This document shows, piece by piece, positions 121 to 49,228 of a stretch of 64,000 nt of DNA (positions are counted from its first letter, which is position 1; the number at the start of each line of letters is the position of its first letter). The notes under the pieces were generated by a model. The model saw only the letters and a program-made list of their open reading frames with translations. It was not told the origin of the DNA and made no database searches. The stretch is from Phallusia mammillata (Eukaryota), in the NCBI GenBank assembly GCA_965637545.1, contig OZ281495.1, positions 12,276,001 to 12,340,000 on the forward strand, written 5' to 3'. Position numbers and translations under genes: made by a program.

Positions 121-1363
121 ATTGCACGTTAAGTTTTACAGCTCTGCTCTCTGATCGATGATGATCATGTGACCTTTGATGGCACGTCACTAGTCTGTTG
201 TTATCAAGTGGCGTAAGTATCAGTTGTACCCACACAAACTGAGCGAATAGTAAAACAAAACAAAACATTTCATATTGCACCATAACAAACATATCTTTTT
301 TTTCGGATAACTTGATCCGTATTTTACCTGTTTTCCAATGTATGATTTGTTTCCAAATACAACACTGATATTATCTACATTTGCATCAAACTGATCGCAG
401 AATAGCAGTACGCTGTCATTATGCTTGAACGTCTGTTCTTTGCCGGCATTGTTCAAATCCAACACTTTACCTGTGTCAGTTTACATACACTTCAGACAAA
501 ATAAAATCCGTTTGTAAAGCTTTCGATATTGTCGGCGATTTTTACCTTTGTAACATTTTGGTGTTGGACCTTCCCATTGAGCAAACTTGTTACAAGTTAC
601 AGTGGCTTGACGTCCTATGATAGTTGAATTTTCGATCAACACTGTGTTGTTGCATTGTAAAATTGCCTTGCGTCCATAAACCATGTCTTGTTCATTAAAT
701 GGTTTGGAAATGATATCATGTTTCAATTTTGGACAATCTATGGACGTTCAACTGATTTGTTATATCCTCTACTATAGTCTATAGCCTATGTTACCAAAAA
801 ATCCATATTATCAATAAAAAAAGATTAACTCAGAAATATAGAAATATAGAGTTAACTTACATTTTATTGAGATTTTCGGGGTGACATAATTCATTCTTCT
901 ACTACAACAGCAGAAAAAAATCCAGTCTTGCAACTGGATTGAACTTTCATTGAACAAGTTTGGTTTTAGTATAGTTATGCGAAAAATACTTCTGTTTGAA
1001 GATTTTCGTTCCTCTTCAATATTAATTAGTGATTGATTGAATACGCTGATGCGGTTGAACCAGCTGGCTATTTGATATGTTTTGTTTTTATACCAGTTAA
1101 AATTTAAGTAATGACTGCCGGGTCTGTACGTAAAGTCAATGTTAATTGTGATGTTTGAAACACCGACAGCCCATTGAAATGACTGATTGTTAAGTCCGTT
1201 CGTCGATGCAACCGACGCGTTCCAACATTCACCTAAAAGTAACACAGTAAATAGTACTTTCTATTTTTGTTGTTAAGTGTATCAACTCACCTCCATATGT
1301 GCCCGTGATCATTACAAAACATAACAAGCTGGTAAAATTCCACTGAATGAGACAAGAATACAT
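121..1363 (-). CDS. Ig-Sushi-Ig membrane receptor paralog 1 (5' part only; gene continues beyond the window start)
   Basis: Exons 1363-1291 (ATG, signal peptide MYSCLIQWNFTSLLCFVMITGTYG), 1232-861 (V-like domain), 737-546 (Sushi: CP..C..C..W..P.C), 470-328 and 238-121 (Ig with C..C). All junctions are GT-AG with consistent phases, and the exon layout matches paralogs 2 and 3. Confidence 0.88.
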
Positions 1364-2338
1364 TTTGCAAAGTAAAAGCTCTAAGTAGGCGAACGTTCGA
1401 CAGCTGTCTGATACATTTCTACACACAAAGTTTGGATTGCAACTAGCTCACACAAAAGGTTTCGTGTGAGTGTGTGGTGCGGTGTTTCGTGTGAACGCCT
1501 ACACATGATATGCACCTCCTGTTCTTACGCCTTAAATAACCGTTAGTCAAAGTAAGTTCTTGCTTTAAAGCGTTAGTATAAGTGACATCACAAACTTTTG
1601 ACAGTCATTTTTTGGTGTGTCAGAATTGGAAGATACCGTCAATTGAAGTAGTTGTAGTTGATACTGCAGGGTCATTCTGCTTGAAACAAACCAGCATTGA
1701 GTCACGTTTTGCACCCTACCCTTGTAACAGTCACATGCCACCAATCTGTGGGGCTTCAAAATCTTTATTGCTTAGGCCTAGATCATCTTGAGGTGAAATT
1801 GTGTCCAGACTATTGTGATATTAAGGGTAACAACAGGGCTCGGACACTGACTGTTTGTAATGTAAGCTAAACGATCAACTGCTACGATCCAAAAATAATT
1901 TTCGCAAAACATTTAAGCGAGATTAATACCTTCACGCCTTTTTTATGTTGCACTTTTTATTCCAAGAAATAACCCACTTGTTTTTTATTCAACGTTAAGG
2001 TGAATTTGACGCAGCGTTTCGCAAACGTCATAAATATCGAAGATGTCTAACATCATGCTCTGAATCTGAACAAGTGATGGCAATCCATGACATGACAAAT
2101 TTTTATTTACAAATATTCGACGAACAAACTATGTAGAGAATGAAAATACGAACGTTTTAGAGAGCATTTGTTGTCTACGTTCAATTGCAAGCTGGCATTT
2201 AATATTCATATGCCCAACGACCGTTTTAAACAAATACGAAGCTTGTCTAAATGTTGTTTGCAAAGCAGAAGAGGCAATGGACGTTGTTACCTTAAAATCA
2301 TACACTTTTTCAAGTTATTTTTATAATAAGCGTTTGAT

Positions 2339-5300
2339 TTATTTGTATTGGTTTGCCACCGGGAGTTCGTAGATTTCACTTTCCATTGGATACTTAGGCT
2401 TCATATCCATGTACCGACTTGTGTTGGCTGATCGCATTCCCATCCTTTGAGATGGACCTGGTCGATTCGGTCTACAAAATATGATAAATTATTACCAGTT
2501 TTTACTTTGTCATGATGTTAGGACATAGTCGTTAATGAAAGCACTTAAATTCGAACACATAATTTCAAATCACAACATATTCCTTCAAAACGCATTTTAA
2601 ACAGTTTTTTTCTCGAAAAAGGTTATACATAGCGAATTTCCAATTTAGTAAACAGTTTTGCTAAATTGGATATTTGAATAACGACTTTTATCCAACTACA
2701 ATTTATTTAAAACATTTTTTCGGTGAAAAAATACCTTCCTACTGTCGAAATTGAAACCTCCTTTTCATTTGGTGCAACACTGTAACGGGCGGTTGAACTC
2801 GATTTCTTATCTAAAACAGTCGATTTTATGCTAAATACATTTCTTTTCTAAATATATAAAATATAAGTGGCACAACTAGTTAACCGATATTGTCACTAAG
2901 AAATCTACAGTTTAAGTTATGTTTATACAAAACAAGTAGTTGACAGAAATCAAACCCGATTTGCATCATGTACAAGCAATTAAAATAGCAACAATATTTG
3001 CATACACAGTATGGTGCAGATAAGCATTTTCGATACCTTTATTTTGACTTCTATTTTTGGTCCAATCATTACCAATCTTGAAACTCAAAAGCAATGCTAC
3101 CACAATGGCACAGCATAACACTGCTATAAGTGCAGCCACGGTAGAAGATATGGAATCACTTTCAACAGCTGCATTTCGACTATCAGTACCAGTTTCATTG
3201 TTCGCAGTAACGATTAATTTGACCTCGTGAGTTTCTGGCGACTTAATCACAATTAGATATTGGCCCAAGTCCCTTTCGGTCACCTGCAATGGTTTTCAAG
3301 TTCAAGTATTCATGAACTTTAGTGTGATCATTCATGTATCAACTTACGTTTGTGAAGTGGAGAACAACTTTGTTTTCAGTATGATTGGTGACATAGTAGA
3401 TGTTGCCAACTTCTTTGCCTACGAGAGAAAATAATGTTGTTGCAGGAACGCAGTTGCAAAGTAAATATAAATCTACGCAACAGATCAGTTGCCGCCTACT
3501 TTAGCTTGACATGAACACGAACTGGTGGACTTCCATATTTAGCGCACTTCGGATATTACTGGGTTTGGTGTTTGCTTGTTATAGGTCTTGCACTAATTGC
3601 ACCATGGTCTATCTGGATCACGGTGTGATAATTTTGCCATAAACATACAAACCAGTCTGTCATTACCTTGTATGAATGCTGTAACTGCACTGTGGCCTGA
3701 TATTGTGGGATTGGATTTAAATTTGAACTCCACATATCCATCTTGATACAAAGTCACACTTGAACTTACAATCATGTTTGGTGGAATGAGAGGTGGAACT
3801 GCAAAGGTTAAAAAATAATTAAAATCACTCAGTAAATTATATCGAAGTTTTCCTGAGTCGCCGAAACATTTGCGAATTGCATGCGAACTCTGCCATAAAC
3901 AAACAGTTGAGTGTAAAATGTTTGCCCTAAAAAAATATTTGCCCCCCCCCAAAAAAAAACAGTTTGCGTGTAAAATGCGTTTAAAACTTTTTTGTAAATC
4001 CAGCTACAACTACACGAAAAATCGATGATGTGATAGGTTATTTCCTTTTTTATTTATGTAAAACATAGAAAAACTCACCCACAATTTTTTGATAATCACA
4101 TGTTGTAAGTAATCTGACTTCTACTTACATTGTACGTGAAGTTTCACAGCTCTGCTCTGTGATCGGTGTTGATCGTGTGAAGTTTGATGACACGTCACCA
4201 GTTTGTCGTGATCCACAGCGGTTAGGATCAGTCTAACCCACACAAACTAAACAAAGCAAAACCAGTCGAGTTGAAACAACAATACCCTATTTTCCGTTCA
4301 TTTTTATGGTATAATTTAATTTTGTACCTTATTTCTGATGTGAGTTCTGTTTCTAAACGAAATGCTGATATTATCCATCTTTGTATTAAACAGGTCGCAG
4401 AATAGCAACAAGCTGGTATTGTGCTTGAAAGTCTGTTCTTTGGCTGCATTATTCATATCCAACACTTTACCTGTACAAGCAACGTGTTTTAACAAAATTT
4501 GCCTTTTATAGCAAAATTTGTCTTGTGAACCCCTCCGCTTCGTATAAAAAATGTTTGCTTTTTACCTTGGTAGCATTCGGGTATTGGACCTTCCCATTGA
4601 GCAAACTTATTACAAACAACAGTGGTATATCGTCCTGTAATAGTTGAATTTTGAACGAACACTGTGTTGTTGCATTGTAAAATTGCCTTCCTTCCATAAA
4701 CGCGGTCTTCCTTTTCGAGCGGTTTAGTGAAATCCAGGTTTGTGACCTTCGGACAATCTGAAAATATTGATGTCAACCTAAAACTATGTTCACATACTTT
4801 GTGAATAACCTAGTTTTTCACCGCCTGAAAACACTTGACATGACATTTATACTTACATTGAATTGAAATGTTTGGTGTAGAATACGTTAAACAGCAGCAG
4901 TACTCGCTCCTGTCAAAAATTTGAATTGAACTCTCATTAAATAGGTTGGGTTTTAGTATGTTGATTCTAAAAGTGATTTTTGTCGTGTATAAGGCTGTGA
5001 CAGTGGCCAGGGATGTGTTGTATATATTAAGCTTTTCAGACTTTTCACCATAATACCAACGAGCCAGCCTGACAGTACTTCCATTTTTATCGTGGTTAAT
5101 ATACAACAGACTTCTCTTAAGGTAGCGAGAAGCGTAGTTTATATTAATAGTTATGTTTTCGACACCAACAGCCCATTGAAACGACTGATTATTGTGTCCG
5201 TCCGTTGATGCAATCGACGCATTCAAACAGTCATCTAAAAAATACAAAATAAATTTTCTTTTCCCTAATGCAGTTTACATAGGCAGATAATTTTGTTTAT

Positions 5301-5412
5301 AATTCAAACCTATTACCGAATTTATTGAACATGACTTACTACTGTAGGCTCTTGCAATCATCGCAAAACATAGTAAGTTTCCTACAATCCAATCCGTTTG
5401 GATCAAACACAT
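2339..5412 (-). CDS. Type-I membrane receptor paralog 2, 520 aa: SP - atypical V-like Ig - Sushi - Ig - Cys-less Ig - TM - Tyr-motif tail
   Basis: Exons 5412-5340, 5234-4857, 4757-4566, 4470-4328, 4246-4129, 3798-3667, 3418-3348, 3283-3037, 2810-2735, 2471-2339 total 1563 nt, with an open frame from ATG to TAA. TM is STVAALIAVLCCAIVVALLLSF. Tail ends ...SRYMDMKPKYPMESEIYELPVANQYK*. Confidence 0.9.
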
Positions 5413-7298
5413 TTTGCTAATTCTCTGAAAGCCTTTACTTCTTGCAAACAAAACGGTTTAAATGGTACAAGGCATGTCATGCAAGGCTTGATCCACCCAC
5501 GTAAATTTGATTTCGCGTGGTTCACGTTGCCTTCTTAAGATGGTATAGCCCACATCTATTGCCTACCATTTGCACAAACAACCCAGTCAACTACAAACTC
5601 TCCCAATATTTTTGGCTGTGTGACCGAAGTCACTATGTGTTTAAACATAATGGTTTTTAGTGCCAACAGCAAATGCGATAACCCACGGAATATTACAATA
5701 TAATGCATGCATTTTACTTTTATAAACCATACCCAGAAAAAGTTTTGCTGTTTGACAACATTAGACTACAACAATGGTATCATTTTACTTTGTTCTTTCT
5801 AGCTCGATTTCAGCAATAGTAAACCACTATCCGTAATAACAAAAACAAATGTTCTTACTTATTTCTTCTTTTTAAAATAACTTTTACAAAAAATTTGCAA
5901 TATTTTGATTTCAATGCTGACAAAATTGACTCAAAATTTTCAGATTTCTCAGTCTTATATTGCTCCAAGCCTCCAACAAACTTGCAGCCAAATGTTAAAA
6001 ACGAAAGAAACAAAGTAAAGCTAGTTTTATCACATTTTTTTGCTATTCGCGTGAAATTGTATAATGTCATGTTAGTGTGTGTCTAAATGTTTTGACTTTG
6101 TGGCATAAACTTTCTCAGTCCATCCGACCTGAAAAAATTAGCCAATTGAAAAGCAAGATTGTATTGGTGTGTACCGACTTTAATATCTGGACAGAGGTGT
6201 AAACTATGAATATTATCTACCTGACGTTAAACATTTGGAAAGGTTCATTATTGTCAATAGCTAATGCTGTGTTGCTTAAATAATGTTTAATAAAGATCTA
6301 TTTACTCAACATTTAAGTGGTTTAATGAAAATTGCTTTGTGTCTTTCAGCGTATAAGTTTAATTGATTGTTTGATGTCGTTGCTGGTACAATTGGCCACA
6401 CACAAAAAAATATCACCACAAAACATCATACTTAACCAATCGGCTGTATGAAAATAAAGTGCTCGTGTATGTCATAAAATGTAGTTTTAAACCCCGGGGC
6501 TAATGTGGTTTTGTAGAATCCGTGAAACTCAGAAAGAAGCCATAACTGTTTTGGGGTCCCTCAATGGTGGGAATCCCTGGTTGTGCCCTATGCAGCAAAT
6601 AAAAGAAACGTGACAGCTATTTTTTTTACTTTTTGTATTTGAATTTTTGCACCTGTACACAAATCGATAAACATTTGTGTACAAAGTGCAAAATTATGTG
6701 CACACAATTTTCCAAATTAATTACATTTTCATTAATTACAGTGCCCAATTTGTCACACACATTGATTACAGTGCCCAATTTGAACTTAACGCACTAAATC
6801 GTCAGTACCCTCTTGTGTGGCTAACGTCCCCAAGTAGCGCTGATGCCCACGTTGTATACGTATTTTACTTACGTAACATGCTTGTACAGGTGTTTCTGTT
6901 TATCTTGTATATCACAGGTTTAAGTGGTTTTGGCGTTAAACTTGAAACTATGTAAACAAACATATTTTCTTGTGAGGCTGCGTATAGTTTGTTTCGTCTA
7001 ACTGGCATCATAGCAAATTGTTCCCGTCCGCGTACATTAAAAAAAATAATCTTGAGACAGGATGAATTAACAAAAAGGGGCCGTTACCAGAAAATAGTTA
7101 AAAACTACATCCTAAACGTTATTCTGGCTACAAACAAAACGATAAAAGTTAAATAATATAAAATTTTATTTGCAAACATTCGGCTAACAACCCATGCAAA
7201 AAAATAAACAAGTTACACACGTTAAATAAAAAGAAGCTTTGTGCAAGATTGATATTGATACCGCAAACAGATTCAGGCGAGTATAACGCCCGTTTCAT

Positions 7299-9985
7299 CT
7301 ATTTGTATTTGTTTGCCTCTGGGAGTTCGTAGATTTCGCTTTCAGCTTGGGGATTCGGCGTAACATTTATGTACCGACTTGGGTTGACTGGCTGCACCGC
7401 CGGCCTTTGGGAAGGTCCTGATTGATTAGGTCTATAAATATGGTGAAATTGGACAAATTTTTAAACTTAAATTGTACATCACGGTATAGCGATGCGTAAA
7501 ATAAAAAAGGATAAATTTGGGGTTAAGGCTTATGCAATGGTTGAAGTGAAACCATAAACCCCTACAGTTTCGGTCCATCTGCCTATCACAGTTTACCTTC
7601 TTCCTGTGGAGTGAGAAACTGCTGTATTTTCTTTCGGCGAAACAGAGTAACGGACAGTTGAGCTCTCGTGATTTTCTAAAACAACAAAAAATTAACTTTT
7701 ATCACGAAATCTAACAAAATTACAACAGCAATGTGACCCAAATCAAACCCGTTTTATTTTAACTTAAGCCCGTATCCGAACCGGACCTACAGAGCCCAGT
7801 CCGACTTTCAACTCTGGTCTTAGGTACAAGAAAGTGACAAATGTTACTTCACATTTAGTGCAATAAACGATATTTCTTACTTTTGTCTTTGCTTCTTTGC
7901 CTGATCCAATCTTTTCCAATCTTGACACCGAAAACTAAGACAACTACAGTAACACAGCATAAGACTGCAGTTAATGCGGTGACGGTTGAAGATTCATAAG
8001 CTGCATTTTGACTATCGTTGCCAGATTCTTTGTTATCAGTAACGATAAACTTGACTTCGTGGGTGGTTGCGAAAATTTGTAGAGACTTTATCACGATTAG
8101 ATATTCGCCCAAGTCCAAATCAGTCACCTGCAATGAATTTCAACCTCGGTGTTCAAAACAGGTTTTAATAAGTTAAGTTATGTACAAGTTCAATAACTTA
8201 CTTTCGTAAAATGGAGAATTACTTTGTTTTCAGTTTGCATGGTGACGTAGTAAACATTACCAACTTCTTTGCCTACAAGAGGAAATAATGTTGTTACTGG
8301 AATGCGGTTACAGAGTGCAGTATAAGACAACAGGATGCAGCAATTGCCGCCTACAATTTGATATGTGTCTTGTTTTGATGCACTTTAATGATTAGTTTAC
8401 TCCGGATCTTGCAACGCTGTGCGCTTGTCATTATACCACCATTGTTAACTACATGTGGCAATTACCCTTGGACATAACATCAGTGTTATTACCTTGCTTA
8501 AAAGCTGTAACTGCACTGTAGCCCGATAACGTCGGGTTGGATTTGAACTTGAACTCAACATATCCAGGTTGATCCAAAGTCAAACTTGAACTTACAGTGG
8601 TGTTTGGTGGAATAAGAGGTGGGACTAGATTAAGTAACATATAAAAATAAAATTACGACCTTCCGCAGTTAGACAGGTTAGGGGACATCGACGGTCAGAT
8701 TATATGCCGAAACTAAAATCAATATAAAATAAGACAATTAAGGTAACCATGTTCATACGTTGTATTCATAATCAACCCTTCTAGCTTGCTACCTACTTAC
8801 ATTGTATATTGAGTTTAACAGCTCTGCTCTCTGATCTATGTTGATCATGTGACGTTTGATGACACGTCACTAGTTTGTTGTTATCCAACGCAGTAAGGAC
8901 CAGTTTTACCCAGACAAACTGAAACAAGAAAAAACAATGTATCGTTTGTCCCTCAATGAAGTTCTCTTATTCGTGTTGCTAAACTGACAATACAACTTTT
9001 TTACCTGATTTCCAAAGTACGTCTTGTTTCCAAACAAAATGCTAATATTATCCATGTTTGCATTAAACTGGTCACAGAATAGCAAAACGCTTGCATTATG
9101 TTTAAAAGTCTGTTCTTTTCCAGCATTGTTTATGTCCAGCATTTCATCTACACATCAAACGATGGTCAGATATTACAAATTTAACTTACGCACTGTTATT
9201 ATAAAAATATTGTTTACCGTTGTAACATTCTGGTATCGGTTCTTCCCATTGTGCGAATTTGTTACAAATGATATCAACTTGACGTCCCACGATAGTCGAA
9301 TTTTTAACAAACACTTTACTGCATTGAACAGTTAATTTGCGTCCATAAACTAGGTCTTGCTGTTGGACTTGCGTTGTTCTTTGTACATTTTTAAGTCTCG
9401 GACAATCTGGGGATGTATAAGATAAAGAATTGAGATCTTTAAATAAAGAAACTAATTTACTTTACTTACGTTTAATTAAAATGATCGGCGTTGTGAAACT
9501 TAGCTCTGATCTACACAACCAGGCAGTGTCATAAAGCTGAATTGAACTTCCATTAAATAATTGAGTCTTCAGAATAGCGATGCTGAGAATACTACTTTTT
9601 GATGAGCTATTGCTTGTTATTGTAACTAGTGATTGGTTGTAAACGCTTAGACTGCCACTATACCAATTTCCAAGTCTGTATGTTTCATTTTTATAGCTAT
9701 AAATCCTTAGGTATACATCATACAGATAGTCATATGTGACATTAATGTTGATTGTTACATTTGTAAAACCAACAGTCCATTGGAACGATTCATTTTTGTA
9801 TCCGTTAGTTGATGCGACCGATGCGTTCCAACATCCTCCTGTAATATTTTCGGGATTATTTCTTAGTTGTTACGTAATGCACTTGCTAACAAACTTTACA
9901 AAACCTACTTACCTGTACATACGCCTGCAAACAGCAACAAAAATACCAAAACTCGAAAAATGCACTGAAACGAAAATGTGCTCAT
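7299..9985 (-). CDS. Type-I membrane receptor paralog 3, 517 aa, same architecture
   Basis: Exons 9985-9913, 9838-9470, 9406-9218, 9147-9005, 8918-8801, 8624-8493, 8272-8202, 8127-7881, 7675-7597, 7431-7299 total 1554 nt, with an open frame from ATG to TAG. Tail ends ...PSRYINVTPNPQAESEIYELPEANKYK*. Confidence 0.9.
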
Positions 9986-10489
9986 TTTGTGGCCTTCTAG
10001 TCTAACATACTAATGTTTCGGCTGTATCAACGTTCAGTTGACTGGTGTATAAAATAGGCATGTAAAACAAGGTATACAAGCAGCCCACACAGAACAGTTT
10101 CGTGCAGTCTATATGCGATCCGTATTTGGTGTGTTAACGCCTACGTGTTGCTGCACATTACACTCGGTAAGACAGGTCAAATGGAATTGTTGCAGATCAT
10201 TTTTAAACACGTGTAACGAATTGCGTTAGTTGTTCGCCTATTTTCAGTTTCTATGTGTTTCACAAGACGAAGTTCATATTGTTGAAAGAAGTCGATTATT
10301 GTACAGTATTAATGCATAATCACATTTATAAAATATGTATTAATCACTTTGGTTTCTATTATACACGTAAAAGTTTTAATTAGACTAAAATCCAACGAAA
10401 TAATTGTTGATCATGTCTATTCTGTATTAGGACAATATTAAAGTTCAACAAGTCAACTTTGTAGAGGTTTTCTGGCAAATGTATTTTAT

Positions 10490-10980
10490 TTTGACGTTTT
10501 GACGTCCTATGCAGGTCGCCTTCATCAGGGTGAATGACATTAAACGCGCGTAGTACAGTGCATGGTGAACAAAGGAAAAAAAGAATGGAACGCAAGCATG
10601 TCACTACGCAACGAAAACACTGCGCGATACAGAAATAAAAGCTCCCGGGCCACAACAGACCCCGCTTTAAAATCAATACGGTCGCCTTGTGATTGGAAAG
10701 GGCCGACTTCTTTGCGTCGCTGTCGGCAACATCCCGTTGATGTTCTTTTAGCAGGTGGTGAGTGACTTCGGCATAGGCATTGGCGTCCAACCTGCCAACA
10801 CTCTGCGCAAGCTACTGAGTCACCGGAAAGATCCCACCAATACCTTTAAACAACGACTTTTGTATTTCTGGTCCCTGCGCCGAATGTTCCTTAATAAATA
10901 TCGGGGAGACTGATAGGTATCGGAGAGACACTCAACACCCGCCGAAAAGAACATCAACGGGGATGTTGCCAACATTGCAT
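10490..10980. mobile_element. Degenerate Penelope-like retroelement fragment (GIY-YIG endonuclease region) with an internal inversion
   Basis: The plus strand 10750-10975 gives (with frameshifts) QPANTLRKLLSHRKDP, PCAECSLINIGETDR and LNTRRKEHQR/DVAN. The minus strand from 10749 leftwards continues KEHQRDVADSDAKKSALSNH...PDEGDL. These match the Penelope P.ntL...KD / C..C...YIGET.R / R..EH motifs. An inverted repeat of about 25 bp lies at 10725-10749 and 10945-10970. Confidence 0.75.
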
Positions 10981-13900
10981 CAGGAAATGTGTTGAAATGT
11001 CGCCAAACAACAAAAAGAAGGTTGTCAAATCTGTCAAATGATTTGTCTTTCATACGTGAAGCTACTAGATAACAATCATAAAAGGATAATAACTACTAAG
11101 CTAAACAAAAAAGCAAAACTGGTATGTTAGTATGTGACGGTAAGCTTGTGCATCACGGGCTGCAAACAATGTAATGATACATTTACAGCCCTAGCAAAAA
11201 ATGGCATACAAAAAGAGAGGCAACCCTTTTTCTTGATGCTCAGGTATTTGTGTGAAAATTGTACAACATTTTTGGTCGCAAACATTGAAACTGTTGATGA
11301 CATTGCGGTGTTAGACTAATAGGCCATAAACTATGGAAAGCATGGGAATCGCCAGGTTAGCCCCAAACCTGGAAGTACGCGCTGTAAGAAAAAACGTGAA
11401 GTGATCGGGCGTAATCACCACATATATGTCTAGAGTGCGTATACGGTCAATAGTCCCTATTGACTTAATATTGATATTAGCCAGTTACACAAACACAATG
11501 CATCACATCGCATCACATTACTACACTATTAAAGCTAAAGTTTTAGTTTCAGACATTCAGCAGCGTCACTTTTGTCTTGTAACAGCAGCAGGCGTTTCGT
11601 AGATTGGACTTGCAGTAGGGGCTTCGTAAATTTGAGTTTCTCTGCAAAGAGTCAAATATTTGACATGCATTGAGTTTTATGATACACATGTTGTATTTTA
11701 AAACGTAGAAATAAAACACATGTCTACTACGTACACAACGCAAAATTATGCTTGTAATATTCTTAATCACGCTAAGTTTACCTCTGCGCAAGTGGCGATT
11801 GACGTGTTTGGTGGAGCACATGTCCGAACAGGCAAATTATTGTCACCTTAAAACCAAAACAATGGTTTATGCCAGCGGTGGCCAAACTACGGCCCGCGGG
11901 CCGCATCCGGGCCCCAGTCCTGTTTCATCCGGCCCGCCAAACACCTTGCCTGTTTTTTTCCAAGCACCATATTAGATAAGAGCTCTTCAACCGGGGTTCC
12001 GTACAACCCTTTCAGGGGTTCCGTGAACTTTAAGGGTTGCACGGAAAATAGCAATTCGAACACGAATGGTTCATAGTGTCATTAACCCTGTTTACATGCG
12101 TCGTCTGCAAACGGATCGGATTAAGCCTCAAGCCGGCTTGAGATTTGATCCATTGCAGCGTCCTATTTACATGCGCATGGCGCAAGGCTCGATCCGCTTC
12201 GCCTTGTACGGTGAACTTACCCCAAAAATAGTAATTTATTTTGCTTTGTTGGTTAAAAAGTCGTTGTTTAATTGTAAATCGCAGCCATATGGCAATTATG
12301 CACCTTTGTTTACAATAAGACAAGAAATGTTATTTAGATCATTTTGTCAGAAAAAATTCAAGCTGTTGCGGAGCGAAAAGCTGTCTTTATGTATTGTATT
12401 TGTCAACTAAAATGCCAACAACTGTTTCTTTTCTAAATTGTATTGGTTTCAGAAGTTGCTGGGCTTTCCTCTAGCTATAAAGTATAGTTCTGAGTAGTTC
12501 ACTGTGAATCTGTTTTCAGCAAGTTTGTTGGTTATGAAGCATGATGGCATTAAACAAGGTTGGGAAAATAGCCATTACATTATGTTTGAGACTGATTACT
12601 AACTAAACACTTCCTGCAGAAGTCATTGTAGGTGTCTGTAAAGTTAGCTTTGTTGGTATTTCTGACTGCTTTTTAAATCACTACAAATATTACTTGATAA
12701 TTGTATTGAAACAAAACATGTATAAACCCAGGTCACAAAAAGGTAAAGCAAAGTTGCAACAACACTGTATAAAATACTATTTATTCAGGTACGTTTTTGG
12801 TTTCATTCATTCAGCAAGTAAAACATGTATTTTTGGTTGCAAATCTTTTGACACTATCAAGAGGATGATGGTAATGCTATGTCATAATGTACAACAGACC
12901 TTAAAGAAGTGCTTAATTGTTTAAAAATCTCAATATCCTTGCTTCTATGTTTGATGAAGTCTGTCATAAATTTTACTTTTTACACATTTGACAAAGACAT
13001 ATATATCTGAACCTACACCAATGAGTACTGGTCAAAAAGCGGAAGGACACAACAACATGAATACATTTACAGCACCATGGTGTAATTTAAAATACTCATT
13101 GAAATACAGGCTTCACATCAGTTATCATTTTATCACTGTTTTGTGTGTTTGGTGTTCTGTTGTGTGAATACTGATATGATATTTTTCATTTAGTTGCTGT
13201 ATCTTTCCACAATTGTCTTTTTATGGACTCCACCATTGCCTTTCTGCTTGTGCCCTGTTCATTTTCGTTCCCAAATAAATCCGAAAATGCATCATGTTCT
13301 TGTGTTGATGTTTGTCTTACAAAAAAATAACATGTGAATATGTACTGACCCAGTGGGTAGACAATTAAAACACACCGTATATCTGACTCCTTGTATAAAC
13401 AAACTAATGCTGTTTAACTAAACCTAAAAGACGCAAACTAAAATAATGTTCCCACATTATATTTCAATAAGGCATGTCACGCAAGCGCCACTGGCGACTA
13501 AACACGCAACACAAAAGTCACCGCGCCACGAATCAACTGTGAGATATCAATTCTAATGCGTACTCTAGTCACTTATGCACTGAAGGTAACTCTAGGTAAC
13601 TTAAGGTAACTCTAGATAACTTAAGGTAACTGATTTTAAGTTTAAAACACGTCGGTCTTTATAGCATTCAGGTCATATAGTTGTTATGCGGCATAGTTAT
13701 AAAAACGTACGCCCGAGAAGATTAACTGAGTTCTAAACCGTAATTATTCTTTAAATCGCTTATAGAAGTGTCAAGTGTAACATGGCTGGAAGCAGTTTAA
13801 AACGTTGCTTCACGTTAACACGTAAGGGGACGATAAAACGATAGCCTTAAGCAGTAATTGACCGGTTCAGTGATAAGAAAAACAGGTTTAAATAGCCGGT

Positions 13901-14047
13901 CAAGCTTTTGTGTAGAAAAAAGGCGAGTTATGAACGGGTTTGACCGGGCCAATAGCTACGTCACAACAATTACATGCAAGTTTTAAAATTAAAAGTCCAA
14001 AGTCCGATATGTTTTAAATGAAAAGTCCAAGGTCCGATACAAATACA

Positions 14048-14410
14048 GTGCCTTAGTACCATTACAAAATAGCCACATGTTATTATGTAGGTGTTAGTCC
14101 CACAAAATAAAACTTAACATGTGATTGTTAATACATTTAACAGTATATAGCATTGGGTGGTGCCTTAGTATCATTACAAAAAACAACAACATGTTATTAT
14201 GTAGGTGTTAGTCCCACAAAATAAAACTTAACATGTGATTGTTAATACATTTAACAGTATATAGCATTGGGTGGTGCCTTAGTATCATTACAAAAAACAA
14301 CAACATGTTTTTATGTAGGTGTTCGTCCTACAAAACAAAACATGTGAATGTGGAATGAAGTTAAAACCAACAGTACATGCTATTGGGTGCTGCCTTACAT
14401 TACAAAATAG
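14048..14410 (+). repeat. Tandem repeat, ~112-116 bp unit, about 3 copies
   Basis: The unit starting (G/C)TGCCTTA recurs at 14048, 14160, 14274 and 14390. Confidence 0.85.
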
Positions 14411-14967
14411 CCACACAATTTTATCACATTGTATAGATTTTGTTACAGTTATGACAGAATGGCTTTACATTTATAAATCACATTTACATATGGTTTGTGG
14501 TGTTGTGTGATGAAATAGTTATGACATGCATCTACTGTTCATGCTCACTTCAGTCACTTGCATTGAAATCAATCTGAATATAGTTTCTTAATATCATCAA
14601 AAAATGTCCACTTATTTTTATGCTGTTGTTGCATTTCTGCAAAACTGGGTTTAAATAATTTTACACTTAACAGAAACATGTTTTCTATATAGCAAAACCA
14701 GCATTGAGGTAAAACATTTAGTAATCCTTGTAACTATTTTTCTTGAAAGATGTATGTTTTGGAACAAGACTACACTTACATGTCATACTCTACCATTTGT
14801 TAGGCATTTGTATGTCATGTATATAATACCGACCACAGAATTTGCAGAGGGGTTTCTAAATCTGCTAACATCAATTGTCACCACCATATATTAAGTACAT
14901 AAACTGAAGCTGAACAGATAGGCAAATTAAAAATTTTTCTAGTTGGTCAACCTGCAAGCAATGGGCC

Positions 14968-15358
14968 GGGTGACACTAAAACGCTGAATGGGCGGGACGG
15001 GCGGGACGTCGCGGAAACCGTTAAATATCGGGTAAATTGCTGACGGTTAGTGCTATTAGGGTTGGGTTGAGGTTTTGTAAAAGTATGTGAATCAAAAAAT
15101 GTCACTGCCTAAAACTTATTCAGCTGTTTCCTGACATTCAGCAAAAATGCTTGGGCGGGAAGTCTCCCTCGGCCGCTGAATGTTTCGCTCGGTCGCGGAA
15201 GGTATCCGGGGGAATTATTTTTAATGATTTTCTATTATAAAACCTTATCCCAACCTTAATAGCACTAACCGTCAGCAATTTAACCCGATATTCAGCGGTT
15301 TTCACGACGTCCCGCCATCTCGCGCCCGTCCCGCCCATTCAGCGTTTTAGTGTCACCC
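14968..15358. mobile_element. Mutator (MULE)-type MITE (fourth layer)
   Basis: Long imperfect TIRs (over 100 bp) starting GGGTGACACTAAAACGCTGAATGGGCGGG; perfect 9-bp TSD CAATGGGCC at 14959-14967 and 15359-15367. Confidence 0.85.
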
Positions 15359-17003
15359 CAATGGGCCTGACAACAAGCCGACTATACTTTCCCGTTGCAC
15401 ATTTCGCCTGATCGGCAGTTTACACCCTAAGTCTATTTCTACAAAATGCTTTCCGATGCAAAGCAAATAAACTGGCAAATAACATATTTTTACCCTCCAA
15501 CTAACCTGACAACACAGCAAACGCGCCTTAACAAGAAGGCGAATTAAGCACGAAACGGATTAAACCACCTAGTCGGGGCGGATCGAGCGTGAAACGGATT
15601 CAATCCGTTTCAGCGGCAAAAACGAGAGAAGCGGATTGACGAAACGGATTAGAATCCGTTTCAAGCGTCCATGTAAACAGGGTTATTGTTTCGAACAGCA
15701 ATGCTCGCCTGTGCAATATTGTTAACCTTTGTTATACGATTGATCAATTGTGACGTAATATACACAACCTTGTTACACTCTAGCTAAGTTGCGAGATTAA
15801 TGTAGAAACGACCGATCCAAATAACACGGCAATGCGTTTCAGTTAACCGTTTAATTCAAGTCAACCTTTGTGATGTGCTTTGGATGTGTATGCATCTTTT
15901 TTCTTTGATGTAGCCTAGGCCTACTTGTATTACATTCATTAAAATTATTTTATGGGGGTTCCGCAAAGTTTGACAAAATACCGTAAGGGTTTCGCGTCAC
16001 TAAAAAGGCTGAAGAGCACTGTATTAGATAATATATATATTTTACAATAATATATTATTTTACTACTACAATAATATATATTTCTGAAAAAGGAAACAAA
16101 CGTTTGTAATTGCCACAAATTAACTTGTAAACATTGAATTCGCCCATAACATTAACAGCTATAGACATTCTATGACGTAACAATGCGTCTGATGGTTTCT
16201 ATCATCACGCCATGTTCTGACCTGAAGTAACCTGAGGTTTTCGGGTGCTGTGGTGTGCTTTTTTAAACGAGGTCATTCTATTGCAGGGGTGGCATATATA
16301 TTTTACAATAATATATATATTTTACTACTACAATAATATATATTTTAATAAAGATGGCAACCAGTTACGACAAATTTTACGTAAATCTTATTTAATCCGG
16401 CCCTCCAGTGGCAAGACAGTTGCAAATTTGGCCCTCTGGTAAAAAAGTTTGGCCACCCCTGGTTTATGCGATGAAACGTTTTGGATTCTTGACCAAAAGG
16501 CTTTGTTCGTGTTCTACCAATTATCTCTTAATACGGATATGTTATTTTGAATGCGTTTGGCATAGTCAGTAAGTAAAGAATGAAACCTTATTTGATATAA
16601 GAATGAAACAGGGTATGAAGAAAAGATGGGTTACATACAAGCAAGTAGCTACAGCGCTGCCGACTATCTGTTCAAAGCCAGCACACTCATAGCAAAATTA
16701 GTGGTAACAAGTAGTCAGAATTTTTTTGTCTGTTTTCGTTTAAATTGGCCTGGTCCAAATATGTAATTATCATTAGGTTTTATATATTCACAGTACGTTG
16801 CATCAAATAGAGTCCGAGACTTGATCGATTTATGTTTGACAATAGACCACAACTTTTTCACAGTGCAAAAGATCAAAACTATTTTTTCTAAATGGTGTCC
16901 TATATTTATTTATTTAGGATTCCAGATTAAATGTAATTCCTCATAAGGCCATCAACTTTTTCAAGCTGCAACTTTCACTTTCAGCGAAGCAACACACCGT
17001 TAC

Positions 17004-19923
17004 CTTTAATCTTCTTTAAATAATTTTGTCCCACTTTTATAGCAAGAAGCAATGCAGTCGCAAACACAAGGCAGAGGACAACTGATTTGGTGTGTTGTTG
17101 TCAATGTTATCTTTTCCTGTGTTTTCAGTAACAATTATTGTCACTTTATGAGTAGTTGCAAAGATTTCTGAAGACTTTATCACGATCAAATATTAGCCAA
17201 GGTCCGACTTGGAAACCTGTAATGTTAAGTTGCGTTTTTGAATATGGCATAAACATTACAAATATTATAAAAAAGTGACGTTTGTGAAATAGAGGACCAC
17301 TTTGTTTTCAGTTTGTTCCGTAACGTAGTAGAAATTTGCAACTTCTTTGCCTGCAAGTAAAAAGCTCTTGTGGGAACACTAATTTGAATTATACTAGTTT
17401 ACCTTTTTAGCAAACAATGCATTTGCGCGATTCAACCGGTGTTACAATTTGAAACTTGTCACAGCTACTTCGCATTTACTAACTGATATCTTTTACATGT
17501 GACATTTATATTTACCTTCCTTGAATACCGTAACAGCACTGTGCCTCAAAGTTGGATTAGATTCAAAAGCGAATTCCACTTTACCAGGTTGTTGCAATGT
17601 TACATTGGAATACACTAGTATATTAGGGGAAATGAGTGGTGGAACTGAAATAAAAAATCGGTTTATTAGTCTCTTAGTGTTAAAAAAGTAAGGTAAATGG
17701 TTCATTTCCAAATTACCAAACGAGAGAACATAACTCGAAAAAGGTTGTTTCATACAATCACAATATTTTGTTAATAGCAAACTATTTCCCAACGGTCCAA
17801 ATCAAGACTCCATATGACATAAGCCCGGAGATCAGGTTCTCCTAATTACTACGCTGCTAGGACTTACGGATATATCGTCCTATGAGTTATATAAATCTAA
17901 TTGTATGCTTTGGAAGTTTTGCCTTAGTAATATAACATAGCTTACCTTTTGATCTAAGTTAGAATTAGTACACGAAGAGTGAAAGAAATTTACCCATAAT
18001 TGGCAATTCACTAATAGGCTGAATGACGTAATCTAGATTAACGTGCGTAATTTTTGTGACGTCAGTTGATAGCTAAGCTAGTTATTGTTAAAAGGTAAGT
18101 AGAACGGTACAAAGACAAAGTCAATCTTCTCAAATACGCTATGTGGGATAGTTTGATTCTATATTAGGCAAAAACACAAGCTAATGAGTGCCATTTTATA
18201 ATTGATTAAAGCCCGTGCATGCCCTGAAAAATAAAATAACAACGGTTTATTGATGGTTTCGTTTTTGTAACTTGCTTTAAGTTTGTTTTATGACTGTCAC
18301 TTATACATTACGTACAATATCCGCCACCAACTTACTACGTTGAGTTGAACAAATCTGCTTCCTGATTGACGTTGATCGCGTGATGACTGATAGCACGTCA
18401 CCAGTTTTTTGTGATCCGAAATTTTTAGTTGGTATTTGACCCACGCAAACTAAATTACACAAAACCTAGCTGGTTAAGGTGTAACAATAAAATGAAATAA
18501 CAATTGCAAAGAACTTTGTTCACTAGTAAGTCATTATTTAGAAAAAAATGTGCCTTGTTTTCAACGTAGGTGTTGTTTCCAACGTAGGTGTTATTTCCCA
18601 ACGTAATATTGATGTTTTCCATATTTGAATCAAATTGATCGCAAAATAGCAATACACTTGTGTTGTGCCTAAAGGCTTGTTTCCCAATAGCAGAGTTCAA
18701 ATCTAGAACGCGGCCTGCGTAAAAGGAGCAATAAAATTATTTCATTTAAACATTTTTTAACGTCCGAAAACCATAAATCCCAGCAACTTGATTCGGGAAA
18801 TCATATCTAATACTATTGCGATTCTCGTGACGATTTACATTTCTCATACTTTAAAGCAGTGGTTCTCAAACACTTCAAGCATGCGGCGCCTCAATCAACT
18901 TAATTTTCTTTTCGAGACGCACTTTTCAGAGTCAGTCAGACTGTTGACACTTCAGAAAATAATAAGCTTTAAAACGTTGTTGTGCATAACACACCAGAAA
19001 ATGTTAAAATAGCAAACTTGGCGGCTCTTGGCGTAGTAGTGTTGAGAGACACACTTCGATTTGTATAATTCAGGATAAAAAAGTATTCGAATTTGTTGAA
19101 AAGTTTTGTTGAAAAGTATTGTTTTTTTCACAACCAACTTTGATGTATTTACCTTTGTAACATTCTGGTGCTGCACCATCCCATCGTGCAAACTTGTTGC
19201 AAGTAAAATTGGCTTGACGGCCTACAACATACGAATTTTTAACAAACACTGAATTTAGACATTGGAGTGTTACTTCGCCTCTATCAATCAGGTCTTGCTG
19301 GTCGACTTGTGTTTTGTATATTGCACATTTTCGGGAAGTGAACAATCTGGAAATGTGTAAGGTTAACGGGTTTAATGTGTAAGGTAACTTATTTGAAAGC
19401 ATAACGCACTTTTCTTTACTTACGTTTAATCAAAATGTTTGGGGTAGAGTAACTTGAGTTATAATAACAACCCTGTGCGTACACGACAATCGAACTTCCC
19501 TTCACAAAGTTAGGCGTCAGAATAGTGACACTGAGAATAATTCTTCCTGGTGTAGTATTTCTTGCTGCGATTGTCACTAGAGATGGGTCGTAAACAAAAG
19601 TACTTCCGTCAAAATAAAAATTTGCAAGAAATTGGGCCTCATTGTTATGGCTACGAATGTCTAGGTACAGATCATACGTATAGTTAAATGTTAATTGTTA
19701 CATTGTTACATTTGTAACACCGATAGCCCATTGAAATGATTCGTTGTTGTATCCGTCAGTTGATGCAACTGACGCGTCCAAACAGAGCCCTAAAAACAAA
19801 TCGAACGTGTATTTGTGACTTTAAAGATTATGTTGACAAAATTATCATACCTGTACATCCACCAGTAAAAACCAACAAACATAACAACCTTCCTAAAATC
19901 GAATGCACTAGAAAGTTACACAT
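17004..19923 (-). pseudogene. Receptor paralog 4, pseudogene
   Basis: Homologous exons 19923-19851, 19789-19424, 19346-19153, 18714-18554, 18449-18332, 17644-17516, 17350-17280, 17216-17004. Lesions: in-frame TAA at 19698-19700, a frameshift in the Sushi exon (194 nt), TAA at 17193-17195, and a frameshift before the TM segment. No tail exons were found. Confidence 0.88.
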
Positions 19924-21445: not shown

Positions 21446-22396
21446 ATGGATGATAAAGATTTTTCTGATATGACACTTGTTCGACTTGACGAAACAGATA
21501 CAGCTGATGTGCAGAAGTTCATCAACGAGCACTACATACCAAATTGGCCGTTTCTTAAAGCTGCATATTTTGACCCAGTGAAAGTGAGAAAGGCGTTTTA
21601 TCAAGCGATAGAAAAGGATATTCAAGACAACACTTCTTTGGGTAAAAATGATTGTATTTAACGTTTTCGTTACATATTTTTGTTGAACTTTTAAAAATTA
21701 AGCACTCATTACCAACATAAAAGATTTGCTAGTTTGAGATATGCTCTCTACCGGTCGGGTTCGCCGAGAGGTTTCTTTGAATTCGGGTTGGGGTTAGGGT
21801 TGGGAATTAGGAATAAATCGGGATTCATAATCTAAAAACTTTTCTACGCAAAAATGTTGCTGAACGTTAATGTGCATTTGTAAGGTTAGATTATTCTTTA
21901 GATGCAGTTTGACATGGTGATGATGACAATAAAATTTTGTATTACAGGTTTTAGATTGAAGTGCAATGGAGAACTTGTTGCTTGTATCATTAATTCGATA
22001 CAAACAAAGCAGACAAGCACAACGCCTGATGAAAATCCTATTCTGCCTAAATACTCACGATTCAAGACATGGTGTTTGCAAGACATCTTTTCTCGATTAA
22101 ACACCTACCGATATCTTTACATGGGCAAGTTGGCCGTAAATCCAAAATACCACAGACACGGCCTTGCTAAAAAGCTTGGGTTAGCTTGTGAGAAAGTGGC
22201 CTGTTTGTCAGGCTGCAATAACATAGTAGCGATGTCCGTCAATGCATACGTGGGCCAAAATATGAAATCCTTGGGTTATGACCTTTTGCACGAGGTACGG
22301 TTGATTGAGTACGTGGATGACGCCACTGGTTTGAAGCCATTTTTAATTGAAAATCCGCCACATACCCATGCTGCAGTATGGCGTAAGAGTGTATGA
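21446..22396 (+). CDS. GNAT acetyltransferase, insect arylalkylamine N-acetyltransferase (iAANAT)-like, copy A
   Basis: Exons 21446-21641 and 21948-22396. Acetyl-CoA motif A LAVNPKYHRHGLAKKL; C-terminal YVDDATG..PF.IENPPH matches the iAANAT-like family. The 5' end is uncertain: an in-frame acceptor at 21393-21394 may link to an unidentified upstream exon. Confidence 0.82.
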
Positions 22397-25492: not shown

Positions 25493-26408
25493 TTACAGGT
25501 GCTTGTGGCATATCACAGCATGAGTATGTGGTGGATTCTCCCTGGTAAAGGGTTTGGATTTTGTGACGTTGTCTACGTAATCAATTAATCGTATTTCCCG
25601 CACGACATCATAACCCAATGATTTAAGATTTTTCAATGTAAATGCATGGGCAGAAACCGCTACTATGTTACTACAACCGGATAGCTGGACAACTTCTTCA
25701 AACGAAATAGCCAACTGTCTAGCTATCCCAAGTCGGGCGTAACTTTGATGAACAGTCAACAGACTTATGTTGTAAAATTTGTCAGTGTTTGAATGAGTAT
25801 AAATGTCTTGTAAACACCATGACCGAAACCGTGTAAATACGGGTAGATTCCAGTTTTCTTCGCGGATTCTTGATACCTGATGGTTCGTGTGAACCGAGCT
25901 CAATAAACACGCGATGAGTTTTCCGCTTCCATTCAATCTTACACCTGCACATGGATCGTAAAGCAAATTAATAAGCTTATCTTTAATTTTGCTATATTTT
26001 GTAATTCCAGAATGTAAGCCTACAAACAACAGCAAGTCGTTAATGTATATGTAAAAGTATGTTTGATTAGTTAGTGGAATACTAAAACCAAAAAAAGTAA
26101 AAATGTTTCTCACCTAAAGAAGCATTGCCCTTGATATCTTCTGCTAATATCTCATAAAACGCGTTCCTCACTTTTACTGGGTCAAAGGAGGCAGCTTTGA
26201 ACAGCGGATAATTCGGTATGTATTGCTCAGTGATCAACGTTTGGACCTCAGTAGTATCAGTTTTGTCAAGACGGACAAGACTCATATTTTGGCCGAGGGC
26301 AGATGCATTTGTGGATACTGTGTGAATTTGACCGCTGTTGGTCTGAAGTGGTTGCTTGGAACAAAATGCAGATCTAACCAAACACAGTTTTTTGAACATG
26401 CGGTACAT
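25493..26408 (-). CDS. iAANAT-like GNAT copy C with a presequence-like N-terminus
   Basis: First ATG at 26408 (MYRMFKKLCLVRSAFCSK...). Exons 26408-26114 and 25944-25493, using the acceptor homologous to copies A and B; an in-frame alternative acceptor at 26020 would add 25 aa. Motif LTVHQSYARLGIARQL and terminal ENPPHTHAV are present. Confidence 0.85.

Positions 26409-42856: not shown

Positions 42857-49228
<6,372 letters not shown>

What the first reader, a model, noticed from the sequence alone, without database searches (positions are those of the whole stretch)
861..19789. Membrane-distal domain varies in three CDR-like loops on a conserved framework
Seen by aligning exon 2 of the four copies. 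The framework C.(N/D)AS(V/I)AST.G..N.SFQW.(V/I)G..N.TI and IL.P/T.....SSI is retained, while three segments differ in both sequence and length. After the B-like strand: DFTYRPGSH / NYASRYLKRS / NVTYDYLYDV / FNYTYDL. After the L/IA.W strand: FNRISVFN / YYGEKSEKLNIYN / YSGSLSVYN / YFDGSTFVYD. After SSIQ: WIFFCCCSRRMNY / RSEYCCCLTY / TAWLCRSELSF / AQGCYYNSSY. These loops are rich in Tyr/Trp/Arg. The later Ig exon (KEQTFKHN.S.LLFCD.F) is nearly invariant in copies 1-3. Inference: the variable segments map to the BC, C'C'' and FG loops of a V-type fold and form a diversified ligand-binding face, like antigen-receptor CDR1-3.
Basis: partly seen in the sequence, partly recalled or inferred. Interest (0 to 1): 0.8.

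Follow-up and report, generated by a model that had tools for sequence, protein, structure and literature searches.

The report
Variable loops in FcoR-like receptors
Four tandem copies (one a dead gene) of a cell-surface receptor laid out like the published Botryllus 'fester co-receptors' differ mostly in the outer loops of their first, antibody-V-like domain, a modest extension of a known family and not a new kind of receptor.

Summary
The quoted motifs are all present. Four minus-strand tandem genes each carry a single phase 1-1 exon for a ~122-aa N-terminal domain (D1). Copy 4 is a pseudogene, with a TAA in D1, a shifted Sushi frame and a second stop.

Variability has four troughs, not three: the predicted BC, C'C'', D/DE and FG. 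The opposite-pole loops are conserved (p = 4e-4). The C, C', C'' and D strands also vary.

Positive selection could not be tested. Synonymous sites and introns are saturated, and dN/dS stays below 1.

The layout is signal peptide, Ig, Sushi, Ig, Ig, TM and a tyrosine-motif tail. This matches the FcoR family of Botryllus schlosseri (PNAS 2025), whose first domain was already called V-type. Other follow-ups in this scan reached the same FcoR reading for clusters elsewhere in this genome.

The parts
861..1232 (-). Copy 1, D1 (V-like) exon. In-frame core is 862-1230. Variable segments: BC 1114-1134, D/DE 991-1026, FG 877-918.
4857..5234 (-). Copy 2, D1 exon. Core is 4858-5232. Variable segments: BC 5113-5136, C'C'' 5038-5049, D/DE 4978-5007, FG 4873-4905.
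   Evidence: In two other individuals the middle (4953-5123 or 4953-5162) does not lay at 85% identity.
9470..9838 (-). Copy 3, D1 exon. Core is 9471-9836. Variable segments: BC 9717-9740, C'C'' about 9657-9659, D/DE 9594-9626, FG 9486-9521.
19424..19789 (-). Copy 4, D1 exon of a pseudogene. In-frame TAA at 19698-19700.
   Evidence: A Sushi frame break and a second stop are seen.
9905..9985 (-). Copy 3 signal-peptide exon. The equivalent ATG is at 1363 (copy 1), 5412 (copy 2) and 19923 (copy 4).
9213..9406 (-). Copy 3 Sushi exon, phase 1. Equivalents: copy 1 about 541-741, copy 2 4561-4758, copy 4 19148-19345 (frame broken).
   Evidence: Pfam Sushi 22.1 and 21.5 bits against a cut-off of 20.7. 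Splice site.
8796..9142 (-). Copy 3 second Ig-like domain, split over two exons (8999-9142 and 8796-8918). Equivalents: copy 1 322-468 and 116-241, copy 2 4322-4465 and 4124-4246, copy 4 18575-18709 and 18336-18452.
8196..8643 (-). Copy 3 third Ig-like domain, first two exons (8485-8643 and 8196-8315). Copy 2 equivalents: 3659-3817 and 3342-3461.
7858..8133 (-). Copy 3 exon 8: last Ig3 strands (DLGEYLIVI), stalk and transmembrane helix. Equivalents: copy 2 2966-3289, copy 4 17040-17225 (with a stop).
7284..7682 (-). Copy 3 cytoplasmic-tail exons (7599-7682 and 7284-7433) carrying RYSVSP, SRYINV and EIYELP. Copy 2 equivalents: 2734-2817 and 2324-2473, with SRYMDM and EIYELP.

Best explanation
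The window holds a tandem, birth-and-death array of FcoR-type immunoglobulin-superfamily receptor genes. Copy 1 is cut by the window edge, copies 2 and 3 look intact, and copy 4 is a pseudogene.

Each gene encodes a signal peptide, an N-terminal non-canonical V-like domain (D1), a Sushi domain, two further Ig-like domains, one transmembrane helix and a tail with tyrosine motifs.

D1 keeps a strongly constrained scaffold. This comprises the N-terminal block, the A'/B strands, the E-F turn, the F and G strands and the loops facing the Sushi domain, with six conserved N-glycan sequons. The paralogs have diverged in sequence and length at the membrane-distal BC, C'C'', D/DE and FG loops, and on the C-C'-C'' strands.

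Inferred: this distal surface is the ligand-binding face, so each germline paralog offers a different specificity, and engagement is read out through the tail tyrosines. Also inferred: the one conserved cysteine pair (residue 2 and a Cys in the FG loop) replaces the canonical B-F disulfide and tethers the CDR3-like loop to the N-terminus.

Shown: the gene anatomy, the variability pattern, purifying selection on the scaffold and high inter-individual divergence. Not shown: binding, positive selection, the disulfide and expression.
For: Anatomy comes from tblastn and tblastx between copies, the splice sites and Pfam Sushi above its cut-off.

Variability: top loops differ from bottom loops at p = 4e-4, and indels sit at BC, CC', C'C'', DE and FG.

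The scaffold is held by selection on the protein, not by recent gene conversion. dN/dS is 0.09-0.19 among copies 1-3 while pS is 0.62-0.69.

Conserved sequons lie at residues 4, 15, 26, 50, 72 and 99, and cysteines at residue 2 plus the FG loop in all four copies.

Other individuals differ by about 4-9% where alignable, and the middle of copy 2's D1 is replaced by unalignable sequence of similar length in two independent samples.

The architecture, exon 8 lying between Ig3 and the TM, a single-exon D1 and clustering all match FcoR as described in PMC12582321.
Against: The models are shallow (3-4 sequences, pLDDT 66-70) and no coordinates were available. The loop-to-face mapping therefore rests on DSSP strand order alone.

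Structural scores do not separate V-set from other sandwiches.

No dN/dS exceeds 1. Loops diverge fastest in any beta-sandwich.

No RNA contig covered the locus.

No published FcoR sequence could be compared: no supplements are held and the profile search of 1.84 billion proteins gave only spurious hits. The organism is coded and I did not identify it.
Confidence: 0.6

Rival explanations
1. Relaxed constraint only. The loops and edge strands of old, saturated paralogs drifted neutrally. The conserved pole reflects the D1-Sushi interface and glycosylation. No diversified binding face is implied.
For: dN/dS is below 1 in every partition, at 0.34-0.89 in the loops. Synonymous sites and introns are at the shuffled baseline. 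One of the four copies is a pseudogene. The circular-shift control is only 9 of 129.
Against: There is a top-versus-bottom loop asymmetry. Tyr/Trp/Arg are enriched in the variable loops. The middle of copy 2's D1 is hyper-divergent between individuals while the neighbouring exons still lay. Published FcoR and FF polymorphism is concentrated in the ectodomain or the Ig domain.
Confidence: 0.25
2. D1 is not an Ig V-type domain but another beta-sandwich (MAM-like, jelly-roll or CBM-like, or phage-tail-like). The CDR mapping would then be meaningless.
Against: Those targets span 130-180 residues for about 103-119 aligned, whereas V domains are size-matched and colinear. V-set dominates Foldseek for both models, and 9 of 10 Atlas rows for copy 3. 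The exon is phase 1-1 and sits N-terminal to Sushi and Ig exons. The E-F turn and F strand keep the spacing of the D-x-G-x-Y-x-C pattern as N-E-S-S-I-Q-L (my reading). The published FcoR first domain was classed Ig-like or V-type.
Confidence: 0.1
3. The mosaic pattern arises from segmental exchange. Conserved 5' and 3' blocks are homogenised between neighbours, or the central BC-to-E segment is swapped in from other paralogs, instead of loops being selected point by point.
For: In two individuals the copy 2 allele breaks at the same point (4953) and is replaced across residues ~24/37-94 as one block. Intergenic recombination is reported for FcoR genes. blastn aligns only the 5' 114 nt and a 51-nt E-F block between copies 1 and 2.
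Against: Synonymous divergence in the conserved blocks is high (pS 0.62-0.69), so there has been no recent homogenisation. Nucleotide identity of the N-terminal block (0.73-0.80) equals that of the Sushi and Ig2 exons.
Confidence: 0.15

Closest known systems
FcoR (fester co-receptor) family of Botryllus schlosseri (Rodriguez-Valbuena et al., PNAS 2025, PMC12582321)
   Same: Both have the domain order signal peptide, N-terminal Ig-like (V-type in some members), Sushi, Ig, Ig, a single TM and a tail with tyrosine motifs. In both, the first Ig domain can be a single exon and exon 8 lies between the third Ig and the TM. Both form tandem polymorphic clusters with copy-number variation, and one published cluster lacks FF partners. 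Neither gives a sequence-level Ig signature. Foldseek E-values fall in the same weak range.
   Different: No sequence comparison was possible. The tail motifs here (SRYINV, SRYMDM, EIYELP, RYSV) are not the ones quoted in the paper. Its main text does not describe loop-level (CDR-like) variability, the Cys2-FG cysteine pair or the sequon pattern. I did not confirm the species.
Fester family (FF: fester, uncle fester)
   Same: Both have an N-terminal V-like Ig followed by Sushi, the same loci and comparable diversity.
   Different: FF proteins have three transmembrane helices and no tyrosine motifs. The genes here have one TM and tyrosine tails. No FF-like gene was found in the 64 kb.
Hydractinia Alr allorecognition genes (PMC9546547; listed, not read here)
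   Same: These are invertebrate histocompatibility-complex IgSF genes whose domains lack the canonical Ig residues, according to the abstract.
   Different: They come from a different phylum. By my recollection they have no Sushi domain, which I did not check. No homology was tested.
Vertebrate single-V receptors and antigen-receptor V domains (CTLA-4/CD28, Nav beta4, MPZ, VH/VHH, TCR delta V)
   Same: These are the best size-matched structural hits, and the variable segments fall where CDR1, CDR2, HV4 and CDR3 lie.
   Different: There is no Pfam V-set match, B-F disulfide or conserved Trp. Diversity is germline and paralogous, with no RSS next to the exon.

Membership tests
FcoR (Botryllus fester co-receptor) | Type I protein with a signal peptide, N-terminal Ig-like domain, Sushi, two further Ig-like domains and a single TM | tested here: met
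   Exon map of copies 2 and 3. Sushi passes the Pfam cut-off. Ig2 and Ig3 are inferred from Cys and DxGxY-type motifs only and were not folded.
FcoR (Botryllus fester co-receptor) | Cytoplasmic tail with two or more tyrosine motifs (ITIM, hemITAM, core-1 YxxI/L/V, core-2) | tested here: met
   Copy 3 has RYSVSP, SRYINV (core-1 and the broad ITIM consensus) and EIYELP. Copy 2 has RYSVAP, SRYMDM and EIYELP. There is no canonical hemITAM or core-2 pair.
FcoR (Botryllus fester co-receptor) | First Ig domain encoded in one or three exons; exon 8 lies between the third Ig and the TM | tested here: met
   D1 is a single phase 1-1 exon. The stalk/TM exon is the eighth exon. Compared with the text read.
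FcoR (Botryllus fester co-receptor) | Sequence similarity to deposited FcoR genes | not testable with these tools
   No supplements are held. The profile search of 1.84 billion representatives gave only 3 spurious hits. The metagenome scan was empty.
FcoR (Botryllus fester co-receptor) | Found in a botryllid ascidian, at the chromosome 5, 9 or 11 clusters | not tested
   The organism is coded. Divergence of 4.4% between individuals is compatible with the 3.6% heterozygosity reported for B. schlosseri, but this is not diagnostic.
Pfam V-set (PF07686) / canonical Ig V domain | Match to the sequence profile | tested here: not met
   No Pfam family at E <= 1 for three D1 exons. No Ig chain found with the profile against PDB sequences.
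Pfam V-set (PF07686) / canonical Ig V domain | B-strand Cys, F-strand Cys and C-strand Trp | tested here: not met
   The only cysteines are at residue 2 and in the FG loop. The B strand reads N-I-T-I-N-I and the F strand S-S-I-Q-L.
Pfam V-set (PF07686) / canonical Ig V domain | Nine-strand sandwich with C' and C'' strands; structural similarity to V domains | tested here: inconclusive
Rearranging antigen-receptor V gene segments | RSS (heptamer, 12- or 23-nt spacer, nonamer) at the 3' end of the V exon | tested here: not met
   There is no 12-spacer match. Five weak 23-spacer matches (3 mismatches each) do not abut any D1 exon. Each D1 exon ends in a GTAAGT donor.

The most novel reading that the evidence does not exclude
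FcoR-type receptors may carry a germline 'CDR' system. On this reading, paralog and allele diversification is focused by selection on four membrane-distal loops of a disulfide-less V-like domain. Its CDR3-like FG loop would be tethered to a conserved, glycosylated N-terminal peptide by a Cys2-Cys(FG) bond. That would give a concrete structural basis for epitope-specific recognition of histocompatibility ligands in the sister group of vertebrates. The published main text does not describe this.
Probability: 0.3. Interest if true: 0.6.

Novelty: new member of a known kind. Interest (0 to 1): 0.35.

Why it matters
Tunicate allorecognition receptors are the nearest invertebrate comparison for the vertebrate V-domain immune receptors. 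Suppose the paralog and allele differences of FcoR-type D1 domains really sit on CDR-equivalent loops. It would then be clear which residues to swap to test how germline receptors tell hundreds of histocompatibility alleles apart. The family, its V-like first domain and its polymorphism are already published, so the gain here is a sharper map and not a new system.

Tried and rejected
1. Sequence homologs of D1. Pfam, the ESM-Atlas feature search, a profile against 1.84 billion representatives (3 spurious repeat-protein hits), PDB sequences and JGI metagenome contigs all gave nothing usable.

2. Organism identification. A neighbouring 206-aa ORF had no hits and Rfam found nothing in the window. 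I gave up on this.

3. dN/dS among paralogs. pS is 0.65-0.8 and many dS values are undefined. The only unsaturated pair (copies 3 and 4) includes the pseudogene. This cannot test positive selection.

4. Comparing D1-middle divergence with introns as a neutral yardstick. The introns are 50-100 nt and at the shuffled baseline of about 0.63-0.68, so the comparison is uninformative. The long blastn HSPs across introns exist only because short introns are bridged by conserved exons.

5. Reads.
- Only contigs were served, and most variant rows were cut from the output (624 not shown), so no codon-level polymorphism table could be built.
- The 'goes back 4634' joints are cross-mapping of copy 2's own Ig2b exon onto copy 3, because the laid stretch starts at 4300. 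They are not a rearrangement.
- No RNA contig lay on the locus.

6. An FF partner or further copies in the window. Relaxed tblastn found only weak chance-level hits.

7. RSS scan. Nothing lies adjacent to the D1 exons.

8. Model coordinates are not exposed, so the Cys2-Cys(FG) distance and surface mapping could not be computed.

9. Spliced full-length proteins have no reference, so they were not sent to any search or fold tool.
Full report
WHAT IS THERE

The window is AT-rich animal DNA (GC about 0.36, no N runs). Between 1 and 20,000 it holds four tandem copies of one multi-exon gene, all on the minus strand (tblastn; tblastx).

For copy 3 the exon series is:
- signal peptide, 9985-~9913
- D1, 9838-9470
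- Sushi, 9406-~9213
- second Ig-like domain in two exons, 9142-8999 and 8918-8796
- third Ig-like domain, 8643-8485 and 8315-8196, plus the start of exon 8
- stalk and transmembrane helix, 8133-7858
- tail exons, 7682-7599 and 7433-7284

Copy 2 has the same series between 5412 and 2324. Copy 1 runs off the left edge of the window after its Ig2b exon.

The D1 exon is bounded by an AG acceptor and a GTAAGT donor and is phase 1-1 in all four copies. The Sushi exon that follows is also phase 1. The Sushi exons of copies 3 and 2 pass Pfam's gathering score over the whole model, at 22.1 and 21.5 bits against 20.7.

THE OBSERVATION

Three corrections are needed.

- Copy 4 is a pseudogene. It has TAA at 19698-19700 inside D1. 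The two halves of its Sushi exon lie in different frames, and its stalk exon has a second stop. It has also lost four of the six conserved N-glycan sequons.
- The later Ig exon is 60-79% identical among copies 1-3, not nearly invariant. Only the KEQTFKHN.S.LLFCD.F motif is fixed.
- Variation is broader than three loops (see the variability section).

Among the folded ectodomains D1 is the most divergent, at 48-53% identity among copies 1-3. Sushi is 60-70%, the Ig2 exons 63-85% and the Ig3 exons 75-78%. The stalk/TM and the tail are as divergent as D1, at 46-58%.

FOLD

D1 matches no Pfam family and no PDB sequence. It has nothing real in 1.84 billion representative proteins, nothing in the Atlas feature search and nothing in JGI metagenomes.

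AlphaFold2 was run with only the paralogs as its alignment. It gave all-beta models of moderate confidence:
- copy 2: pLDDT 66, pTM 0.68
- copy 3: pLDDT 70, pTM 0.68

The copy 3 model has strands at 7-10, 15-18, 27-34, 41-49, 51-59, 62-65, 71-77 and 81-88, a helical turn at 91-94, and strands at 98-105 and 118-121. This reads as A, A', B, C, C', C'', D, E, turn, F, G.

Search results:
- Foldseek against the PDB is headed by CTLA-4, VHH, VH, Nav beta4 and MPZL1 for both models, but only at E 7e-3 to 1e-1 and TM 0.4-0.5.
- In the ESM-Atlas shape search, 9 of 10 rows for copy 3 are V-set families at TM 0.53-0.57. For copy 2 the result is a mixture of phage tail proteins (TM 0.66-0.67) and V-set (0.50-0.53).

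I conclude that D1 is a beta-sandwich whose best size-matched and most recurrent match is the V-set, but this is not proven.

The canonical Ig residues are absent. There is no B- or F-strand cysteine and no conserved C-strand tryptophan. The only cysteines conserved in all four copies are residue 2 and one in the FG loop. I infer a non-canonical disulfide tying the N-terminus to the FG loop. It could not be measured because model coordinates are not exposed.

WHERE THE VARIABILITY LIES

Mean pairwise identity by segment:
- N-terminal block 0.69, A' 0.83, A'B loop 0.61, B 0.62
- BC 0.23, C 0.33, C' 0.32, C'C'' 0.07, C'' 0.23
- C''D 0.63
- D 0.21, DE 0.11
- E 0.45, EF 0.54, F 0.48
- FG 0.32, G 0.60

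A 7-column BLOSUM62 profile has four minima, at BC, C'C'', D/DE and FG. The C, C', C'' and D strands score 1.06, against 2.51 for A', B, E, F and G (p = 0.003). Columns are not independent, and a circular-shift control on identity gives only 9 of 129.

Indels sit at BC, CC', C'C'', DE and FG. Tyr/Trp/Arg are about twofold enriched in the three loops.

Six sequons are conserved in copies 1-3. They lie in the N-terminal block and in the A'B/B, CC', C''D and EF regions. On a V-type fold this is the Sushi-proximal pole plus the N-terminal strand, which would leave the distal loops mostly glycan-free. That last point is an inference.

SELECTION

Among copies 1-3 the conserved scaffold has dN/dS of 0.09-0.19 with pS of 0.62-0.69. 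It is therefore held by purifying selection on the protein and not by recent gene conversion. Nucleotide identity of the N-terminal block (0.73-0.80) is like that of the Sushi and Ig2 exons.

In the variable parts dN is 0.6-0.8, but dS is saturated or undefined. No partition exceeds 1. The only unsaturated pair (copies 3 and 4: 0.89 in the loops, 0.49 in the scaffold) includes the pseudogene. The introns are too short and too diverged to serve as a neutral yardstick. Positive selection is therefore neither shown nor excluded.

OTHER INDIVIDUALS

Contigs of the likely source sample hold 93-95% of the sampled words of 4300-10200. Two other studies of the same species label hold 36-38% and 17%.

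When laid at 85% identity or more:
- One individual (X3) spans copy 3 in a single piece, 6635-10185, with 156 differences and 36 gaps. That is about 4.4%, close to the 3.6% heterozygosity reported for Botryllus schlosseri.
- Around copy 2 the alignable pieces differ by about 7-15%.
- In both X3 and X5 the alignment stops at 4953 and resumes at 5162 or 5123. In X5 the gap holds 163 other letters where the window has 169.

This corresponds to residues ~24/37-94 of D1, from BC through E. Non-coding patches nearby are equally unalignable, so this shows deep allelic divergence that does not spare the D1 core. It does not show selection.

X5 gave no depth over 9028-10200, which could be absence or divergence. 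No RNA contig lay on the locus. Most variant rows were cut from the output, so no codon-level table could be made.

COMPARISON WITH WHAT IS KNOWN

A lead came from an earlier follow-up note in this scan, on another cluster of the same genome (a second note). It sent me to Rodriguez-Valbuena et al., PNAS 2025 (PMC12582321). That paper describes the fester co-receptor (FcoR) family of Botryllus schlosseri as follows:
- two or more tyrosine motifs in every tail longer than 60 aa
- a first domain that matches antibody V domains at Foldseek E 0.5 to 2.7e-5 and is classed V-type in 7 of 26 proteins
- a first Ig domain encoded in one or three exons
- an exon 8 between the third Ig and the TM
- polymorphic clusters with copy-number variation on three chromosomes, one of them lacking FF partners

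Every architectural feature I could test is met here. No FF-like gene lies in the 64 kb.

Sequence membership could not be tested because no FcoR sequences are held. I did not identify the species.

The paper's main text contains no mention of CDRs, loops, cysteines, disulfides or glycosylation. The loop-level map, the Cys2-FG pair and the sequon pattern are therefore small additions, if they hold.

VERDICT

The V-like/CDR-like reading is plausible and partly supported, but the positive-selection part is untested. The likeness to antigen receptors is by analogy only: diversity is germline and paralogous, and no RSS abuts the exon. The system belongs to a family published in 2024-25, so I class it as a new member of a known kind, of moderate interest.

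Noticed in passing
window 2324-2473 versus 7284-7433 (minus strand): The last tail exon differs between copies 2 and 3 at one tyrosine motif. Copy 2 has SRYMDM (a YxxM type) and copy 3 has SRYINV (YxxV, which fits the broad ITIM consensus). The downstream EIYELP is identical in both. An earlier first-reader note reports the same thing.
   Followed up: partly
window 7737-7785: This short segment recruits many unrelated contigs with loose ends in all four runs, and depth spikes there. It looks like a dispersed repeat, lying just 3' of copy 3's TM exon.
   Followed up: no
window 9028-10200: One individual (run X5) shows no contig over the 5' half of copy 3, while its 3' half is covered. This could be presence/absence or very divergent haplotype variation.
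   Followed up: no
window 10000-17000: A gap of about 7 kb separates copy 3 from the pseudogene copy 4. It contains a GC-richer stretch (0.41 at 10-12 kb) and several 60-136-aa ORFs of unknown nature, possibly a transposon insertion.
   Followed up: no
window 21902-22396 (+) and 25493-26113 (-): Two paralogous ORFs on opposite strands share long motifs such as ...SGC.NIVA.S.....KSLGYD...NPPHTHA... One of them had no homolog at E <= 1e-3 in the word-indexed protein search.
   Followed up: partly
window 16827-16865, 18260-18298, 26383-26421, 49186-49224, 53960-53998: Five 23-spacer RSS-like matches with 3 mismatches each, against 1.5 expected (0 of 100 shuffles reach 5). None lies next to a V-like exon. 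They are probably A-rich chance matches.
   Followed up: partly
window 57180-57302 (+): A weak Sushi-like tblastn hit (E 0.016) lies in the protease-rich right half of the window. It may be a CCP module of one of the serine-protease genes noted by first readers.
   Followed up: no
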